DNA of 63,995 nt, the filler included, from Octopus bimaculoides (Eukaryota): assembly GCF_001194135.2 (NCBI RefSeq). It is 8 parts of 6 records of this genome, joined end to end, with 100 filler letters (N's around TTAATTAATTAA, not from the genome) between each part and the next. Parts side by side here need not be neighbours in the genome. Positions count along the whole stretch, not along the records: positions 1 to 9,219 come from NC_068990.1; 7 more parts are not named here. One strand, written 5' to 3'. Position 1 is the first letter of the stretch, and the number at the start of each line of letters is the position of its first letter. A program made the position numbers and the translations under genes. Under the pieces are notes generated by a model, which was given only the letters and a program-made list of their open reading frames with translations, ran no database searches and had not been told where the DNA came from. Positions 56 through 8,404 of this stretch are shown piece by piece.

Positions 56-396
56 GGAGGCACAATGACCCAGTGGTTAGGGCAGTGGACTCGCGGTCAT
101 AGGATCGCGATTTCGATTCCCAGACCGGGCGTTGTGAGTGTTTATTGAGCGAAAACACCTAAAGCTCCATGAGGCTCCGGCAGGGGATGGTGGCGAACCC
201 TGCTGTACTCTTTCACCACAACTTTCTCTCACTCTTACTTCCTGTTTCTGTTGTGCCTGTAATTCAAAGGGTCAGCCTTGTCACACTGTGTCTGTGGAGT
301 GCTCAGCCATTTGCATGTTAATTTCACGAGCAGGCTGTTCCATTATTGAATCAACTGGAACCTTCGACGTCGTAAGCGACGGAGTGCCAACAACAA
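56..396 (+). mobile_element. tRNA-derived SINE, family A, near full length
   Basis: Head with A-box-like TGACCCAGTGGTTAG and B-box-like ATTTCGATTCC; body CCTGTAATTCAAAGGG..CAGCC. Related pieces at 18092, 36850 and 55096. Confidence 0.8.
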
Positions 397-429: not shown

Positions 430-1330
430 ACTCAAGCTAATAGGTATGCGCTCAGAAGGCTCAGAATAGGTATGCCACTAAAATTCCAGTGTGATTGTTG
501 AAGTTCTGCTTTTGTGACTGCCTTATCCAAAACGGATAAACGTGGCTTCCCCTCGAGTTAGTAGGTAGAGTTTAAGGTAAAAAGGTGAGGCAAACAAACT
601 GGCAAAACTTGACAAGGGCATTTAATTTAATTTAGCTATAAAATGAAAGGCAGAGATAGTTTCTGACAGCTGTTTCTTAGATATTCCAGCTATTGGAATG
701 TTGTACTGAGCAAAGATGCCATACGCTGAGTATTTTGTCATCAGAGTGAGATAGATAGAAAGAGACAAGTTAAACATAAGTAACAGTAACAGTGGAATAA
801 TAGTGCCTCGTCAATGATTGTTGTGGTCCTTTAAGTCCAGACAGGGAGGATAGATCCAAATGAAACTAGTTAGATCCAGTGAGATTGGGTATTCCTTAGG
901 TAAATCAGAAAGAATGGTTTGCAAGTAATCCATAGTGAGGGAAAATGGATGCTAGCAGTTCCAAAGATAAATACTGAGAGGAGGAGTAAATATAGTACAT
1001 TCTGGTGGGAGAAAGATAGGTAGATAGGAGCTTTGTATTAGATATATACTAATCAGTACAGCAAGGGCACTCCTGCCCAGATAGGTTAATGGGGTTTGTG
1101 TATAAAGACAGATAGATAAGGGGTAAATAAAGCAGATGTCCGACCTAAAGGCTGGATAGCAATAGGAGGGGAGTGTGGAGGCGTGATAAAACAGTTATAA
1201 AAAAGATAATAGACGTCAGATGAAGTAGGTGGTCAATTTTACTAGAAGTGAAAAGAGAGTCCAGGCAGTTTTAGATGAGTTAATGCTAGGAATAGATGCT
1301 GTACAAGCAAACAAAAGACTTAAGATTTGA
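430..1330 (-). mobile_element. Highly degenerate LINE ORF2 remnant (possible CR1/Jockey-group APE endonuclease region)
   Basis: Minus-strand frames give short matches such as TKLLSTYLSP, MDYLQTILSDLP and AVTKAEL in LINE-like order; many stops and frameshifts. Confidence 0.3.
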
Positions 1331-1772: not shown

Positions 1773-1830
1773 ATGAAATGTCCTTGTCAGATATTGCCTA
1801 ATTGTTTGCCTCACCTTTCTACTTAAACCT

Positions 1831-1842
1831 ATGTATGTGTGC

Positions 1843-1875
<33 letters not shown>

Positions 1876-1985
1876 TGTATGTATGTATGTATGTATGCAT
1901 GTGTGTATGTATGTATGCATGCATGTGTGTATGTATGTATGCATGAGTAATGTGTGCATGTTTGGATGCATATGACATGTATGAT
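1831..1985. repeat. (TATG)n microsatellite
   Basis: Direct reading of the sequence. Confidence 0.95.
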
Positions 1986-2494: not shown

Positions 2495-3672
2495 TCTCTG
2501 ATTGTAGGTGTGTTTATTCTGGATTTGTAAATCCCAGTTTCTCAAGATTGGTGCTGGAGCAGTTAGTTATGTAGCTAAGTGCTCCAACGATTATTGGTAG
2601 AAATATAAAGCTATAGTCTGGATGGAGAATCTGCAACTTTCTCATCAGTTTGACATACTTGTCCTGTTTTTTCACTAACTTTTAACATTATGGTAACATG
2701 TGCTGAGCAACTGATTTCAACAACAGTATATAGTTTCTTTTCTCTGTTCTCAATCGTTGTGCATGAGTTGGTGTGCTTGCATTTTATTCAATCTTGCCAG
2801 GGACAATGTTTTGAATTATAAGTTATTATACTTACCACATCACTGCAGCTTCTTATATGTGTCTCAAGATTATCCTTTCCATGAAGGTCATTATAAATTA
2901 TTCTATGACATTACATCTCATATATAGGTAATACTGTGAGAACATTTTCGGGCAACCTCTTATGATATGAGTGACCATCCTCTACTAATCCTGCATTTGA
3001 ATGGTGAATATGCTTCCTTATCTCAACTGTTCATCCAGTATTTTGTGACTATTCCTTGCTCCTGTATTGCAAAAGCATTTCCTTCAAAATGGAACTTAAT
3101 ATAACGGTTGTTAGTCCAAGACGGTTGTTGTCATTTTGAGGCCTTTTCAGAATATAGACATGCATAATCTTTTGCTGGTATGTATGTGCATCCTCTCTTC
3201 TGGTAACCTGCTACAGTAGAGTTGCACAACTTCTCTCACTGTATATCCTAGTTCATCAGTCATGTTATCAGTCTCAGATATGCAAACTTGGTTCATCATC
3301 AATATTTGGTTGTTAGTAGTTGAAGTAATATGATGCAACATTCAAAGGCTGTTGGGATCAATGTTAAATTTCTACCACCTTATTTTTGTTTTAAGTAAAG
3401 GTAGTCTACTTAAATGTTGGTGTGAAAATTCCAGATATGAGTTAACAATTTTCAGATTTTAATATCAATATACTGGAGCTCATCTACTGTTCAATTGAGT
3501 AGCTCACTTGTTGGTATGAACACTGGTACAGCAAGCATGTTGTAGGCTATTGAGTTCTTGCATGCAGAAAGTTCTAAGGACCATATTTTCTTTATCCTGG
3601 TGTTATATTCCATAGTTATATACTTCTTCTGGTAGATGTCATCATCAGAAATATTTTCATCTGTTACTATGT
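2495..3672 (-). mobile_element. R4/Dong-like non-LTR retrotransposon, decayed 3' part (RT C-terminus plus restriction-like endonuclease)
   Basis: EYNTRIKKIWSLELSACKNSIAYNMLAVPVF, then REKKLYTVVEISCSAHV...KQDKYVKLMRKLQILHPDYSFIFLPIIVGALSY, typical of REL-type LINE ORFs. Confidence 0.8.
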
Positions 3673-3674
3673 AC

Positions 3675-5055
3675 CAGTTAAAGATGTCTCCTTCATCTTT
3701 AACCAACAGAAATAATGAAAGTAAGATTGGAAGATTCTTTGGTTCAGACCTCTCATCTGTTTCAAAATACAAATTTTCAAATCCAACCAGGTTCTTTTAA
3801 TTGCTTGAGTATTGGTTCTAGTGTTTGGACCAACATAATGTCTTTCGTGGCTGACAGTAAAATGGCAGAAATTTAGACAAGCTGGCCATTCATCATAATG
3901 AATAACCAAATTTTTCTGCAACTTCTCTTTGGATTATGGGTTCAAGTGTTTCAACAATTTCTTTCTTTTTTTTTTTTTTTTTTNNNNNNNNNNNNNNNNN
4001 NNNNNNNNNNNNNNNNNNNNNNNNNNNNNNNNNNNNNNNNNNNNNNNNNNNNNNNNNNNNNNNNNNNNNNNNNNNNNNNNNNNNNNNNNNNNNNNNNNNN
4101 NNNNNNNNNNNNNNNNNNNNNNNNNNNNNNNNNNNNNNNNNNNNNNNNNNNNNNNNNNNNNNNNNNNNNNNNNNNNNNNNNNNNNNNNNNNNNNNNNNNN
4201 NNNNNNNNNNNNNNNNNNNNNNNNNNNNNNNNNNNNNNNNNNNNNNNNNNNNNNNNNNNNNNNNNNNNNNNNNNNNNNNNNNNNNNNNNNNNNNNNNNNN
4301 NNNNNNNNNNNNNNNNNNNNNNNNNNNNNNNNNNNNNNNNNNNNNNNNNNNNNNNNNNNNNNNNNNNNNNNNNNNNNNNNNNNNNNNNNNNNNNNNNNNN
4401 NNNNNNNNNNNNNNNNNNNNNNNNNNNNNNNNNNNNNNNNNNNNNNNNNNNNNNNNNNNNNNNNNNNNNNNNNNNNNNNNNNNNNNNNNNNNNNNTATGT
4501 ATATATGCATATGTTTGTGTATCTGTGTTTGTCCCCCCAACATTGTTTGACAACCGATGCTGGTGTGCTTATGTCCCCGTAACTTAGTGGTTCGGCAAAA
4601 AAAGACCGATAGAATAAGTACTAGGCTTACAAAGAGTAAGTCCTGGGGTCAATTTGCTCGACTAAAGGTGGTGCTGAAACAAATAAAAGAACACATGTTG
4701 AACCAATCACATATTAATTCAGAACTTCTACCAGTTAATTGATGCCTCTTATCATAAGAGACATCTTGAATAAAATAAAAAATTAATTTTAAAATTTGAC
4801 ACAGAGAAAAATTGCAATAGATTTTGTTATTTAAATCAGTATAATAGAAAAATCATTTCCATTGCAGATAGACGGATAAGTTTGGTAGCCACAAATCTTG
4901 TAACATAAAGATGGCAAAATTTCCCCATTTTTCCTTTTTCTGGAAGCTTCCTTCACATCTCCACCACAACGATGACATGGTGCAACATTTTGAGATCTGA
5001 AGACCGTTTTCTTGTGTTTCTAGCAGATGTTCACTGAATTCATCAATAAAATTAT
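3675..5055 (-). mobile_element. Merlin (IS1016/IS1595-like DDE) DNA transposon transposase remnant, split by a gap and a SINE
   Basis: N-terminal PCHRCGGDVKEASRK...NGNDFFYYTDLN...ICDWFNMC (4690-5050); C-terminal ETLEPIIQREVA / VIHYDEWPA / HFTVSH / NTQAIKRTWLDLK (3700-3965). Confidence 0.75.
4495..4680 (+). mobile_element. SINE family B, 3' half
   Basis: Aligns by eye to 2270-2430. Confidence 0.85.
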
Positions 5056-5190
5056 TTTAATAATAACAAAATCATGTTTCATTTATGCCTTAGTAAATAA
5101 TAATAAGAATAAACCAAGAATAAACAATATAATAATGATAAATGTAAGTAAACTAATGTTTGTCTTTTAGAAGTGTTGAAATGTATTGTA

Positions 5191-5464
5191 AGATACAGAT
5201 AAGGTAATAATTTATTTTCAAGCACAGAAACGCTGATAGAACAGCAGAGACAGGATAAAATATCCATATAAAGTGGGTTAATTTGCCAGTGGGCAGTTTA
5301 GTTTAATTGGTAAAGCACTTGACCAGTAATCAAAGGGATGTGCATTCAGGTCTCATGGCTGGTTGCTGACAAATTTTTCTGCTTTGTATGGATATTTTAT
5401 GCTGTCTCTACTGTTCTATCAGTGTTTTTGCATTTAAAAATAAATTATTACCTTGTCTGTGTCT
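5191..5464. mobile_element. Palindromic element: ~100-bp inverted arms (5191-5291 / 5364-5464) enclosing a tRNA-like core
   Basis: AGATACAGATAAGGTAATAATTTATTTT...CTGATAGAACAGCAGAGACAGGATAAAATATCCATATAAAG matches the reverse complement of 5381-5464 with scattered mismatches. Confidence 0.8.
5292..5363 (+). tRNA. tRNA-Thr(AGT)-like pseudogene
   Basis: 72 nt with canonical cloverleaf spacing: D-arm GTTT/AAGC with GG, anticodon stem TTGA/TCAA, loop CC-AGT-AA (anticodon 5325-5327), T-loop TTCAGGT. T-stem and acceptor stem are degraded. Confidence 0.65.
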
Positions 5465-5649
5465 CAAAACAATATGATAATTAAAATAAGCACATAAATC
5501 ACATATCAAAGTAAATTTGTTCATATTGATCACATGCCAAAGTAGCACTAGCACATAGTAAGCTAAGAAGTATCCAAAAGTAATTGCCCTTTAAGCTTTA
5601 GATCACATGCCAAAGTAGCACCCAGTATTTGTTCTGTATTTCCAGCAGT

Positions 5650-6760
5650 GACTCTGCTTTCTGAATGCATAGTTGCTTTCATAACGTATGTTACATCATC
5701 AATGGAACAAAGTGAATTTACATTACTGAAAGGCGATCATGTTAAACAGTCTTCATCATGTGACCCTCAGTTTCAGTCATACAACATCATTATATACAGA
5801 TTTTATGTCACAACACTTCAGGAACAACAATCTCATTATCAACAATGAGTTTTTGTATAATTGCTTTATAAGGTCTTTCAGTTACTGAATCATTATCCCA
5901 AATATTTATTTTGATTCAATTAATAACATTAAACAAAACTAGATAATTCTTCCTTTGAGCCTATGATTCTTCCATTTCAGCGCATTTGTTTCCACCCAAT
6001 GAATAAATCATGTCTCTATTGTGCTTTCACCTCACTTTATTGGCTCATTCAATTTTATTCTAGATAGAGCATCAACATAGGGAAATGTATTTAAATTCAG
6101 AATTTAAATAGCAAACTAGATTGCTAATCATAATATTCTAACAGATGTTACATTAAGCAGTTCTCTATTCAAATTGAATATACGTTCTAAAATGTTATGG
6201 TCAGTTCTCAAGAAAGCATTTCCATCTTAATAATAAATGTCTGGCTCTTTGCATTGTTCATATAATAACCAAATCCTGTCTTTCAGTATTAGAAAAAAAA
6301 GCTATCTTCAGTTTCAGATCGATAAGAACAGGAACAGATGCATCTCCTGAAACAGTACAGCAGACATTGAACTTTAGCGAGCATCTGTAGTAACTACAAC
6401 CTCTTTTGTCACGTCATATAGATGTACAACGAGTGGTTCAGCCAAATCACTTTGCAAGTTCTTTTCTTCCTTTCTTTTATTTTTTCAGTCAGCATTTGAT
6501 GTTAAATATGAGAGAGCATCCAAACAATGCTACAGTTTTGAGAATGCCTGGTGCTGAAGTTGCTTGCTTAGATGCGAAATGTATGACTTTATGAAAGAGA
6601 CCTTTGTTGATAGATTGGTAAAGATACACAATGTCAAATTAAATAAATTTGCATTAGTTTTTACCCTCAGTTTGTTTGAACCAATTTATCACACCAGTGT
6701 TGTTTCTCCACGTAATTAAATTTGTATAGGCAGTAAATTTTGAAGGAAATTTTACTGCCA
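5650..6760 (-). mobile_element. Ty3/Gypsy LTR retrotransposon pol remnant (RT C-terminus, RNase H)
   Basis: LAEPLVVHLYDVTKEVVVTTDA...SAVLFQE; SNTERQDLVII; LRTDHNILERIFNLNRELLNVTSVRIL; PYVDALSR; SVTERPYK. Multiple stops. Confidence 0.75.
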
Positions 6761-6779
6761 ATACAAATTTAATTATGAA

Positions 6780-6990: not shown

Positions 6991-8404
6991 ACTATATAAT
7001 TGATTTTATGGATTTTATTTCCTCATGGAATGGTTTGTGCAAAACATAGGCATCTTACTTTGAGGACATCTCATTTGCTTAAGGCACCTGTTGATTGGAT
7101 GCTGGAGGCTATCTAGTTGACCTAAAGCTTTCTGGTAGCTCAAAGATTCCTCATTAGCTTTTCAGTAGAGGAAATTTGTGGTGACATTTGGTGTCTCCAA
7201 ACAAACTAATGTAGGCTGGTAGTAGAACCAATAGGATCTAGTTTGAATACTAGCAAAAGATATTGAGACATATAACACCAACTGCTCCAGAACTTTCTCA
7301 ACAAATATAATAGATTCTACTGGGATGCAACAGATTTAAAACATGTTCCATCATATGTTCCAAGTGCTTAAATGTTGAGATGTACTAAGTAAATCTATAT
7401 GTGAACTAGCATAGCAGCTTCTACTAAATCACTGAAATTTATCAATGTTGTTCCAATCATTCACAAGAAATTCTATCTTCAAGATCACTTCTACATGTTT
7501 AAACCCACACCATCTTAGATATAAGGTGGACATGAGCAGAATGATCAATCTATAATATAATGATTGAAGGAGTGTGGGTCTGTGTCCAATTTATTTTTTC
7601 CCACATTATTAAAAAAGTCATATTACTTTGAAGGAATTAAAAAAAAAAATTTTAAGCTATAAAGTTTATCTGTATATTAAACGTAAATCATAACGCTTAA
7701 TATTACAAGATTCACTTCCATTTGAATTCCATATGTAAACAAATAGCGTTTTTTTTCTCATTCATAAAAAATGTAATAAAGTGAAAAAAAAAACGAAAAA
7801 AAAACAAGTGAGTAAATTATTTTTAAAAGTATTACATAGGGCAAAAACAATAATCCCTATCTAATAGAATTAAGTTTTCAAATTGTGTTAGACTGCAGTC
7901 ATGCTGGGGTACCACTTGAAATTATTTAATCAATAATATAATCTCCCAACACAATTCTTCATACATGGTCAGATGTAATGTTGCATTATCAAGAGGTTCA
8001 AGAAAAGTAAAATATAAAAATATTAACCGAAATAAATGAAAAGGGTCCATTTGCTGATAATTGTGTCTGCAAAAAAATTCTACAGTGATATGAAACATTC
8101 ATTAATCTCTTTTAATTGAAATGTATTTAAGTTTCTTTTTAATTGCTAAGAAATGAACACTAGAAACACCTAAGACGTCTATAAGTGAATATAATGAAAC
8201 AACAATATGGCAAAACTCAACTCTTGATATTGGTAAATGTAATTCATTAATTCCTACCAGGGCATCTATTCATGAACATTTTCCTTTGACAGTCTCATCT
8301 CTTCCCCAATTTTCATTATCATCTTTTCTAAATGTATCATGGATTATTTTACTGATTACAGATTAAACTACATCATCAATTTACTCTATAATTTATGTAT
8401 CATA

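What the first reader, a model, noticed from the sequence alone, without database searches (positions are those of the whole stretch)
5191..5464. tRNA-Thr(AGT)-like gene sealed inside ~100-bp inverted repeats: possible tRNA-cored palindromic mobile element
Seen: a 72-nt sequence with exact cloverleaf spacing and AGT anticodon (5292-5363) is abutted on both sides by long imperfect inverted arms that run right up to the acceptor stem. Ordinary SINEs have a tRNA head, a body and a tail; ordinary MITEs have no tRNA core. Inference: a MITE-like element that captured a Pol III promoter, or a long-hairpin/dsRNA-producing unit whose loop is a tRNA. I do not recognise it as a described family.
Basis: partly seen in the sequence, partly recalled or inferred. 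Interest (0 to 1): 0.8.

Follow-up and report, generated by a model that had tools for sequence, protein, structure and literature searches.

The report
Decayed tRNA copy inside octopus palindrome
A roughly 290-base palindrome in an octopus genome does have a worn-out tRNA-like sequence exactly at its centre, but only this one copy could be examined, so whether it is a new kind of jumping element or a one-off copying accident stays open.

Summary
Arms 5186-5289 and 5366-5469 (104 nt, 82% complementary) enclose a 76-nt centre. The Rfam tRNA model matches 5292-5364(+) end to end, with anticodon AGT.

The core is tRNA-derived but is not a working tRNA. It scores 19.5 bits against a 29-bit threshold, and ARAGORN finds nothing. 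Its cloverleaf energy is -0.8 kcal/mol against a -15.8 MFE. It has C33, and its B box is damaged.

The palindrome runs in register through the acceptor stem, so the real loop is only the tRNA interior. The arms differ by 19 of 104 positions (15 transitions, 4 transversions), with no strand bias in G·U-compatible mismatches. That pattern is neutral decay, about 0.11 substitutions per site per arm.

A T5 run lies 10 nt after the tRNA-like end, and further T4-5 runs sit in the arms. A Pol III transcript would therefore stop early and could never include the left arm.

The window is octopus DNA. No second copy of arm or core turned up in the window or in 25 kb of O. bimaculoides, and no clear target-site duplication is present. 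The tools hold no cephalopod genome, so copy number, the decisive test, was not done.

Best reading (about 0.4): one fold-back or template-switch event extended the tRNA's own acceptor-stem repeat. Main rival (about 0.3): a MITE-like family with a tRNA core.

The parts
5184..5291 (.). Left arm of the palindrome. Ungapped core is 5186-5289. 5184-5185 joins through a 2-nt indel. 5290-5291 are two linker bases that still pair as G·T wobbles with 5364-5365.
5292..5364 (+). Decayed tRNA-like core with full-length cloverleaf homology. Acceptor 5292-5298/5357-5363, D arm 5301-5316, anticodon arm 5318-5334, T arm 5340-5356, discriminator 5364.
   Evidence: Rfam tRNA model 19.5 bits, model 1-71/71. 17 of 21 pairs standard, cloverleaf -0.8 kcal/mol. 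ARAGORN negative.
5325..5327 (+). Anticodon-position triplet AGT (Thr) in loop CCAGTAA. Position 33 is C instead of the invariant U.
   Evidence: cmscan alignment
5299..5356 (+). The true unpaired centre of the palindrome, 58 nt: the tRNA interior (D, anticodon, variable and T regions). The acceptor stem on either side is the innermost part of the long helix.
   Evidence: in-register pair list
5365..5474 (.). Right arm of the palindrome (ungapped core 5366-5469).
5374..5378 (+). T5 run 10 nt after the tRNA-like 3' end, a Pol III terminator-like signal. It coincides with a cluster of arm mismatches: 5 of the 19 lie at 5274-5279 / 5376-5381.

Best explanation
This is a real, old and now inert palindrome, built around a copy of a tRNA gene of the Thr(AGT) type in an octopus genome.

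The tRNA's own acceptor stem is a 7-bp inverted repeat with a 58-nt spacer, and it forms the innermost part of the palindrome. The ~105-nt arms are an outward, in-register extension of that stem.

The simplest way to get this geometry is a single fold-back (snap-back or template-switch) event. A newly made DNA strand ending in the 3' acceptor half pairs with the 5' acceptor half of the same strand. It then copies the flank backwards for about 105 nt before returning to its template.

After that, both arms and the core decayed neutrally, at about 0.11 substitutions per site per arm. The tRNA lost U33, G53, A58 and four stem pairs.

Today it is not a tRNA gene and not a Pol III hairpin unit. It could make a ~115-bp double-stranded RNA stem only as a passive part of a longer Pol II transcript.

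Shown: the palindrome, the tRNA homology, the in-register continuity, the neutral mismatch pattern and the T runs. Inferred: the fold-back origin, and that the locus is single or low copy.
For: 1. The helix is continuous and in register from the arms through 5290·5365 and 5291·5364 (wobble-compatible) into the acceptor stem 5292-5298/5357-5363, with no bulge or asymmetric leftover. Fold-back priming at the acceptor stem predicts this. A captured or inserted tRNA does not.
2. The arms are equal in length and almost free of indels.
3. The arms differ at 19 of 104 positions: 15 transitions and 4 transversions. G·U-compatible mismatches number 9 on the + strand and 6 on the - strand. K2P distance is 0.22. 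This is neutral decay of two once-identical copies.
4. About 8 substitutions are expected in a 73-nt core at 0.11 per site. About 7-8 departures from a canonical tRNA are seen (G2·G71, C27·A43, C52·U62, A53·C61, C33, G58). That fits a core that was an intact tRNA gene copy when the palindrome formed.
5. The core looks like a gene, not a retrocopy or a SINE: no CCA, no body, no A-rich tail, and a T5 run 10 nt downstream.
6. There is no second copy of arm or core in the window or in 25 kb of O. bimaculoides DNA, and no convincing duplication at the ends.
7. Template switching during replication is documented to create and lengthen inverted repeats and hairpins (PMC8794818, PMC10710096, PMC13100816).
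Against: Copy number was not measured, and 34 kb of a ~2.7-Gb genome cannot exclude a family of thousands of copies.

The template-switch events I recall from the literature are mostly tens of bases, so a 105-nt copied tract would be long (from memory; the cited papers were seen only as search listings).

A ~290-bp palindrome with ~18% arm divergence is also the ordinary signature of a MITE. The window holds other inverted-repeat elements of the same age (569-659/1740-1830, also 82%) and a DNA-transposase pseudogene next door.

As DNA, the present acceptor stem has only 3 Watson-Crick pairs, so the priming stem has to be assumed intact in the ancestor.
Confidence: 0.4

Rival explanations
1. 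It is one decayed copy of a MITE-like, non-autonomous DNA-transposon family. The ~105-bp arms are its terminal inverted repeats and the internal segment is a tRNA-gene-derived core. A transposase supplied in trans moves it as DNA. The founder may itself have arisen by the fold-back event described above.
For: Size (~291 bp), long inverted ends, no coding capacity, and arm divergence typical of old MITEs. The genome neighbourhood is rich in DNA-transposon remains. These include an IS1595/Merlin-type transposase pseudogene whose inferred start lies only ~70-130 nt from the left arm. There is also another element with 91-nt inverted ends at the same 82%. The pairing runs out through a TA on each side (5184-5185 / 5473-5474) and then stops, which a TA target duplication would allow.
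Against: No second copy of arm or core in 34 kb. No convincing target-site duplication. No third arm copy downstream of the neighbouring transposase pseudogene, so the arms are not shown to be its ends. My literature searches turned up no DNA-transposon family with a small-RNA-gene core. One listed paper's title calls tRNA-bearing LTR elements 'a new type' of small-RNA-gene-derived mobile element (PMC10886601).
Confidence: 0.3
2. It is a nested insertion: a tRNA pseudogene or tRNA-SINE fragment landed by chance in the middle of a pre-existing palindromic MITE.
For: tRNA-derived SINEs are very dense here: three copies in 9 kb of window and more than 10 fragments in 25 kb of L001.
Against: The core has no SINE body, no A-rich tail, no CCA, and no direct repeat flanking it. 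Retroposition truncates 5' ends, not 3' ends, so a head-only piece is unexpected. The insert would have to sit within about 2 nt of the exact centre and be in register with the helix. The window's real SINE heads do not hit the tRNA model at all, whereas this core does.
Confidence: 0.07
3. The tRNA likeness is a coincidence. An ordinary palindromic repeat supplies an 'acceptor stem' for free, and its loop merely resembles a tRNA interior.
For: The score is below Rfam's threshold (19.5 against 29). ARAGORN is negative. The cloverleaf is not thermodynamically favoured. The acceptor stem is indeed just the inner end of the palindrome.
Against: E = 0.044 for this 116-nt stretch against 4227 families is about 1e-5 for the tRNA family alone. 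The match covers the whole model with correct spacing. It keeps U8, A14, G18, G19, A21, a perfect 4-bp D stem, Y32, R37 and T54-T55-C56-R57-C61. It is the only tRNA-model hit in 34 kb of octopus DNA.
Confidence: 0.08
4. It is a functional RNA locus: a long hairpin processed into small RNAs or edited by ADAR, or a Pol III-driven tRNA-like RNA with a regulatory role.
For: Very stable hairpin on the + strand (-143 kcal/mol, z = -18), somewhat more stable than on the - strand (-116 kcal/mol). Cephalopods edit double-stranded RNA extensively (general knowledge).
Against: The mismatches look neutral: 15 transitions to 4 transversions, and G·U-compatible mismatches 9 against 6 between strands. Pol III could not transcribe both arms, and T runs would stop it early. 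The B box is damaged. No expression data are available.
Confidence: 0.05

Closest known systems
MITEs (miniature inverted-repeat transposable elements, non-autonomous DNA transposons)
   Same: About 290 bp, long inverted ends, AT-rich, non-coding, folds into one long hairpin, and sits among other DNA-transposon remains.
   Different: The internal segment is a full-length tRNA-gene homologue that is in register with the arms. No target-site duplication or second copy could be shown. Family membership is untested.
tRNA-derived SINEs, including octopus OK/OR1/OR2 and HaSE2 of Helicoverpa, whose 3' region comes from a mariner-like element (PMC3272025)
   Same: A tRNA-derived sequence joined to repeat-like sequence. 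HaSE2 shows that tRNA heads and DNA-transposon sequence can combine.
   Different: There is no body plus LINE-type tail, no A-rich or microsatellite tail, and T4-5 runs would stop Pol III inside the 'body'. The upstream arm could not be carried by a Pol III transcript. The tRNA part sits in the centre, not at the 5' end.
Hairpins and inverted repeats made or lengthened by replication template switching (PMC8794818, PMC10710096, PMC13100816), and fold-back priming at short inverted repeats in palindrome formation
   Same: A reverse-complement copy of adjacent sequence, nucleated at a pre-existing short inverted repeat. Arms are equal in length and free of indels. No target duplication.
   Different: The copied tract (~105 nt) looks longer than the template-switch events I recall (from memory; those papers were not read). 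The nucleating repeat would be a tRNA acceptor stem, for which I found no described case.
Small-RNA-gene-bearing non-SINE mobile elements: Cassandra (5S) and Helenus/Ajax (tRNA-like) non-autonomous LTR retrotransposons (PMC10886601)
   Same: A small-RNA gene-like sequence embedded in the repeated ends or body of a non-SINE element.
   Different: Those carry the RNA-like sequence inside direct LTRs and move through RNA. Here a single copy sits between inverted arms.
Long inverted repeats giving hairpin RNAs (hpRNA loci; LIRBase, PMC8728187)
   Same: An inverted repeat of more than 100 bp with a short spacer.
   Different: No evidence of transcription, processing or selection on the pairing.

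Membership tests
Functional nuclear tRNA gene | Scores above the curated tRNA covariance-model threshold and is called by a tRNA finder | tested here: not met
   19.5 bits against a gathering score of 29. ARAGORN gives 0 genes, even at 70% thresholds.
Functional nuclear tRNA gene | Stable cloverleaf with invariant U33, G53, A58 and C61 | tested here: not met
   Cloverleaf -0.8 kcal/mol against MFE -15.8, z = -0.54. C33, A53 and G58 are present, and 4 of 21 pairs are broken.
Functional nuclear tRNA gene | Oligo-T Pol III terminator shortly downstream | tested here: met
   T5 at 5374-5378, 10 nt after the discriminator. This is weak evidence in DNA that is 71% A+T.
tRNA-derived SINE | tRNA-related 5' head with A and B boxes | tested here: inconclusive
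   The head-like sequence is present. The A box is largely kept (TAGTTTAATTGG), but the B box is degraded (CATTCAGGTCT).
tRNA-derived SINE | Body and LINE-type, A-rich or simple-repeat 3' tail, transcribable by Pol III without internal T4+ runs | tested here: not met
   There is no tail after 5474. T runs lie at 5374-5378, 5395-5398 and 5425-5429.
tRNA-derived SINE | Many dispersed copies with target-site duplications | not testable with these tools
   No cephalopod genome is searchable. There are 0 further copies in 34 kb. A 14/15 direct repeat at 5122-5136 / 5467-5481 is not significant.
MITE | Terminal inverted repeats, small size, no coding capacity | tested here: met
   104-nt arms at 82%, ~291 bp in all, and only ORFs of 62 aa or less.
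MITE | Target-site duplication of a length typical of a superfamily | tested here: inconclusive
   The scan of all boundary and length combinations found only 3-4-nt matches expected by chance. A TA on each side is possible.
MITE | Multiple dispersed copies, and related autonomous elements sharing the ends | not testable with these tools
   Searches found none. The neighbouring IS1595-type transposase pseudogene shows no matching end downstream.
Template-switch or fold-back inverted duplication | New arm is an exact-register reverse complement of the adjacent flank, nucleated at a pre-existing short inverted repeat | tested here: met
   The helix runs in register into the acceptor stem, and the arms are equal and ungapped.
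Template-switch or fold-back inverted duplication | Single locus, and the ancestral state (tRNA with one arm only) visible in a related species | not testable with these tools
   No orthologous sequence is available.
hpRNA or dsRNA-producing locus | Pairing kept by selection on the transcribed strand, and small RNAs or editing observed | tested here: not met
   G·U-compatible mismatches number 9 (+) against 6 (-), with 15 transitions to 4 transversions, which is neutral. Expression is not testable here.

The most novel reading that the evidence does not exclude
The element belongs to a DNA-transposon-type (MITE-like) family whose internal core is a tRNA gene copy. That would be a class of small-RNA-gene-derived mobile element moved as DNA, alongside SINEs and the 5S- or tRNA-bearing LTR elements. 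It could also be the kind of intermediate from which SINEs with transposon-derived 3' regions (such as HaSE2) arise.
Probability: 0.25. Interest if true: 0.7.

Novelty: new variant of a known kind. Interest (0 to 1): 0.35.

Why it matters
If it is single-copy, it is a tidy natural example of a tRNA gene's acceptor stem seeding a long palindrome by fold-back copying. That would interest people who study how hairpins and inverted repeats arise, but it has no evident function.

If it proves to be a dispersed family, it would be a DNA-transposon-type element with a tRNA core. My literature searches found no such family. In cephalopods, where double-stranded RNA editing is pervasive, it could also be a source of long hairpins in transcripts.

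A single BLASTN against an octopus assembly decides between the two.

Tried and rejected
- **Finding more copies through spurious ORFs.** A translation of the core plus right arm found nothing in the 5.8-billion-protein search. Six exact look-ups of window ORFs were not on record.
- **Exact-pattern scans.** Conserved arm blocks found nothing in JGI metagenomes or GTDB genomes. This was expected, since neither collection holds cephalopod DNA.
- **Reaching octopus DNA.** A composite SINE-ORF query reached one O. bimaculoides protein and one 25-kb locus. That locus shares the SINEs but has no arm or core match. The second hit had no contig on record.
- **Possible arm fragment at 7795-7827.** Not significant: 12 of 300 block shuffles scored as high.
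- **Arms as ends of the neighbouring transposon.** No matching repeat lies downstream of the IS1595/Merlin-type pseudogene.
- **Pfam on window translations.** Negative on the raw pieces. The transposase identity came only from the HMMER search and the Pfam domains of its hits.
- **tRNA type by similarity.** This is a lead, not a test.
- **Literature.** Searches for a tRNA-cored MITE, for octopus hairpin repeats, and for the arm or core sequence itself found nothing relevant.
- **Other origins considered and dropped.** Assembly artefact: the arms are 18% diverged, not identical. Nuclear copy of a mitochondrial tRNA: it has nuclear-type D and T loops and the wrong anticodon for mt-tRNA-Thr. Parvovirus-like terminal hairpin: the tRNA-specific invariants and spacing argue against it, and no viral genes lie nearby.
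- **Tool artefact.** The '670-nt perfect palindrome' in L001 is a run of N plus (AT)n.

Full report
**What the window is.** The piece is AT-rich animal DNA with assembly gaps. Three tRNA-derived SINE copies lie at about 60-300, 2085-2490 and 4495-4680. They match more than ten SINE fragments in a 25-kb stretch of Octopus bimaculoides chromosome CM046624.1 (L001) at 77-89% identity. A query built from their ORFs hit an O. bimaculoides protein. The window therefore comes from an octopus genome, either O. bimaculoides or a relative that shares its SINE families.

**Check of the observation.**
- The inverted repeat is real and far beyond chance. The arms are 5186-5289 and 5366-5469: 104 nt, 82% complementary, 76 nt apart.
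- With one 2-nt indel the pairing reaches about 5184/5474.
- The 296-nt stretch folds at -143 kcal/mol, against -62.8 +/- 4.4 for shuffles (z = -18).
- The Rfam tRNA model aligns to 5292-5364 on the + strand over its whole length (1-71 of 71), at 19.5 bits.
- E is 0.044 when only 116 nt are searched against all 4227 families. That is about 1e-5 for the tRNA family alone at this one place.
- This is the only hit to the tRNA model in the window and in 25 kb of O. bimaculoides DNA. Neither the window's SINE heads nor L001's SINE fragments reach E <= 10.
- I accept the core as tRNA-derived.

**The core is not a working tRNA gene.**
- The score is below Rfam's gathering score of 29.
- ARAGORN calls nothing, even with thresholds lowered to 70%.
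- Four of 21 cloverleaf pairs are broken: G2·G71, C27·A43, C52·U62 and A53·C61.
- Position 33 is C, position 53 is A and position 58 is G.
- The cloverleaf is worth only -0.8 kcal/mol, while the sequence prefers another fold at -15.8. It is no more stable than shuffles (z = -0.54).
I treat this only as a lead.

**Anatomy that bears on origin.**
- The helix does not stop at the arms. It continues in register through 5290·5365 and 5291·5364, both G·T, which is one transition away from a Watson-Crick pair. It then runs into the acceptor stem 5292-5298/5357-5363.
- The acceptor stem is therefore simply the innermost segment of the palindrome. The true loop is the 58-nt tRNA interior, 5299-5356.
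- The arms are equal in length and essentially free of indels.
- They differ at 19 of 104 positions: 15 transitions and 4 transversions.
- Mismatches that would still pair as G·U number 9 on the + strand and 6 on the - strand. Nothing suggests selection for an RNA helix on either strand.
- The K2P distance is 0.22, or about 0.11 per arm since the arms were identical.
- At that rate a 73-nt core should have taken about 8 substitutions. I count about 7-8 departures from a canonical tRNA. The core was therefore probably an intact tRNA gene copy when the palindrome formed, and it has drifted since (inference).
- The core looks like a gene rather than a retrocopy or a SINE. It has no CCA, no body and no A-rich tail, and a T5 run at 5374-5378 lies 10 nt after the discriminator.
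- Five of the 19 arm mismatches cluster at that T run (5274-5279 / 5376-5381). I cannot explain this with confidence.

**Consequences for mechanism.** A tRNA-type internal promoter starts Pol III at the tRNA, so the left arm cannot be part of such a transcript. The T5 run and further T4-5 runs (5395-5398, 5425-5429) would stop Pol III within the right arm. The B box has lost G53 and A58. The 'Pol III-driven dsRNA unit' reading is therefore not supported. The same T runs argue against the core plus right arm being a SINE. A double-stranded RNA stem could form only if a longer Pol II transcript happens to cross the locus.

**Is it mobile?** This is the decisive question, and I could not answer it.
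- There is no second copy of either arm or of the core in the window or in L001.
- A 33-nt arm-like match at 7795-7827 is not significant: 12 of 300 shuffles scored as high.
- A scan of all plausible boundaries and duplication lengths found only 3-4-nt matches of the kind chance gives.
- The pairing does run out through a TA on each side and then stops. A TA duplication would allow this, but in 71% A+T DNA it proves little.
- A 14/15 direct repeat (5122-5136 / 5467-5481) overlaps the right end. It would imply an odd 47-nt leader and is not significant.
- None of the searchable collections contains cephalopod genomes. Translated-ORF and exact-pattern searches found nothing, and window ORFs are not on record.
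- Thirty-four kilobases of a genome of a few gigabases cannot exclude thousands of copies.

**Context.**
- An IS1595/ISXO2 (Merlin-type) transposase pseudogene lies on the minus strand immediately to the left.
- The stretch 3921-3667 has 154 homologues, and the long ones carry PF12762.
- One homologue, P0063, matches a zinc-ribbon piece at about 5019-4850 with its residues 46-89. It matches the 3906-3680 piece with its residues 249-333.
- The pseudogene is interrupted by a SINE and an assembly gap.
- Its inferred start lies only about 70-130 nt from the palindrome's left edge.
- No third copy of the arm lies beyond the other end of the pseudogene. There is thus no evidence that the arms are its termini.
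- The window also holds another element with 91-nt inverted ends at the same 82% (569-659 / 1740-1830) and a 63-bp near-perfect palindrome (6713-6775).
- DNA-transposon relics of similar age are therefore common here.

**Weighing the explanations.**
- *Nested insertion into a MITE (0.07).* The insert would need to be a head-only tRNA piece with no tail or duplication. It would also have to land within about 2 nt of the exact centre and in register. This is unlikely.
- *Chance resemblance (0.08).* The model statistics, and the conserved U8, A14, G18-G19, A21, D stem, Y32, R37 and T54-C56 with correct spacing, argue against it.
- *MITE-like family with a tRNA core (0.3).* The general look of the element and its neighbourhood favour this.
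- *One-off fold-back or template-switch copy (0.4).* The in-register continuity with the acceptor stem favours this. So does the absence of any duplication or second copy. My searches also found no DNA-transposon family with a small-RNA-gene core (PMC10886601 surfaced only as a listing). Template switching is a documented way to create and extend hairpins (PMC8794818, PMC10710096, PMC13100816), although a 105-nt tract would be long by my recollection of reported events.
- These last two readings can both hold: a family could have been founded by such an event.
- *Present-day function as a hairpin or Pol III RNA (0.05).* The mismatch pattern and the T runs speak against it.

**Verdict.** The structure is real and unusual in its geometry. 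It is a single, decayed and apparently inert copy, and its status as a mobile family is untested. Novelty: a new variant of known kinds (palindrome by fold-back copying, or MITE), not yet a new class. Interest is 0.35, rising to about 0.7 if a genome-wide search shows a dispersed family that keeps arms and core together.

Noticed in passing
window 5019-4850 and 3921-3667, minus strand (SINE at 4495-4680 and N gap 3984-4495 in between): Pseudogene of an IS1595/ISXO2-like (Merlin-type) DDE transposase. A zinc-ribbon N-terminal piece and the C-terminal catalytic piece both align to the same homologue, P0063. There are 154 homologues, and the long ones carry PF12762. Raw Pfam scans of the window pieces were negative.
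   Followed up: yes
window 60-300, 2085-2490, 4495-4680: Three copies or fragments of tRNA-derived SINEs shared with O. bimaculoides (77-89% to L001). The 2085-2490 copy has a CORE-like 'CTTGGGCAAGT' segment. None of their heads reaches E <= 10 with the Rfam tRNA model.
   Followed up: partly
window 569-659 and 1740-1830: A 91-nt inverted repeat pair, 82% complementary and 1080 nt apart. It is a candidate ~1.26-kb non-autonomous DNA transposon with the same arm divergence as the finding. It contains a 63-nt internal direct repeat (1503-1565 / 1677-1739, 81%).
   Followed up: no
window 6713-6775: A 63-bp near-perfect palindrome (29-nt arms, 93%, 5-nt loop) that gives weak sub-threshold hits to several miRNA models. 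One arm resembles 3063-3090 (24 of 29, E = 0.024 in a small search).
   Followed up: partly
window 5528-5548 and 5601-5621: An exact 21-nt direct repeat (GATCACATGCCAAAGTAGCAC) 73 nt apart, with a degenerate third copy at 5495-5513. The sequences after the repeats are unrelated. It may be a small duplication or the flanks of a short insertion.
   Followed up: no
window 5122-5136 and 5467-5481: A 14/15 direct repeat (AAACAATAT[A/G]ATAAT), one copy 48 nt left of the palindrome and the other overlapping its right end. It looks like a target-site duplication but is not statistically convincing in this AT-rich DNA.
   Followed up: partly
window 5274-5279 / 5376-5381: Five of the 19 arm mismatches, including two of the four transversions, cluster at the inner end of the arms, exactly where the right arm has its T5 run. 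This is unexplained. It might be a later small event, or past selection for a terminator.
   Followed up: no
window 1827-1978: A (TGTA)n/(TGCA)n microsatellite gives the best Rfam 'hits' in the window (mir-297, 54.8 bits, below the threshold of 90). These are low-complexity false positives.
   Followed up: yes
L001 20199-21539: The '670-nt 100% palindrome' reported by the repeat finder is a run of N flanked by (AT)n. It is an artefact, not a feature.
   Followed up: yes
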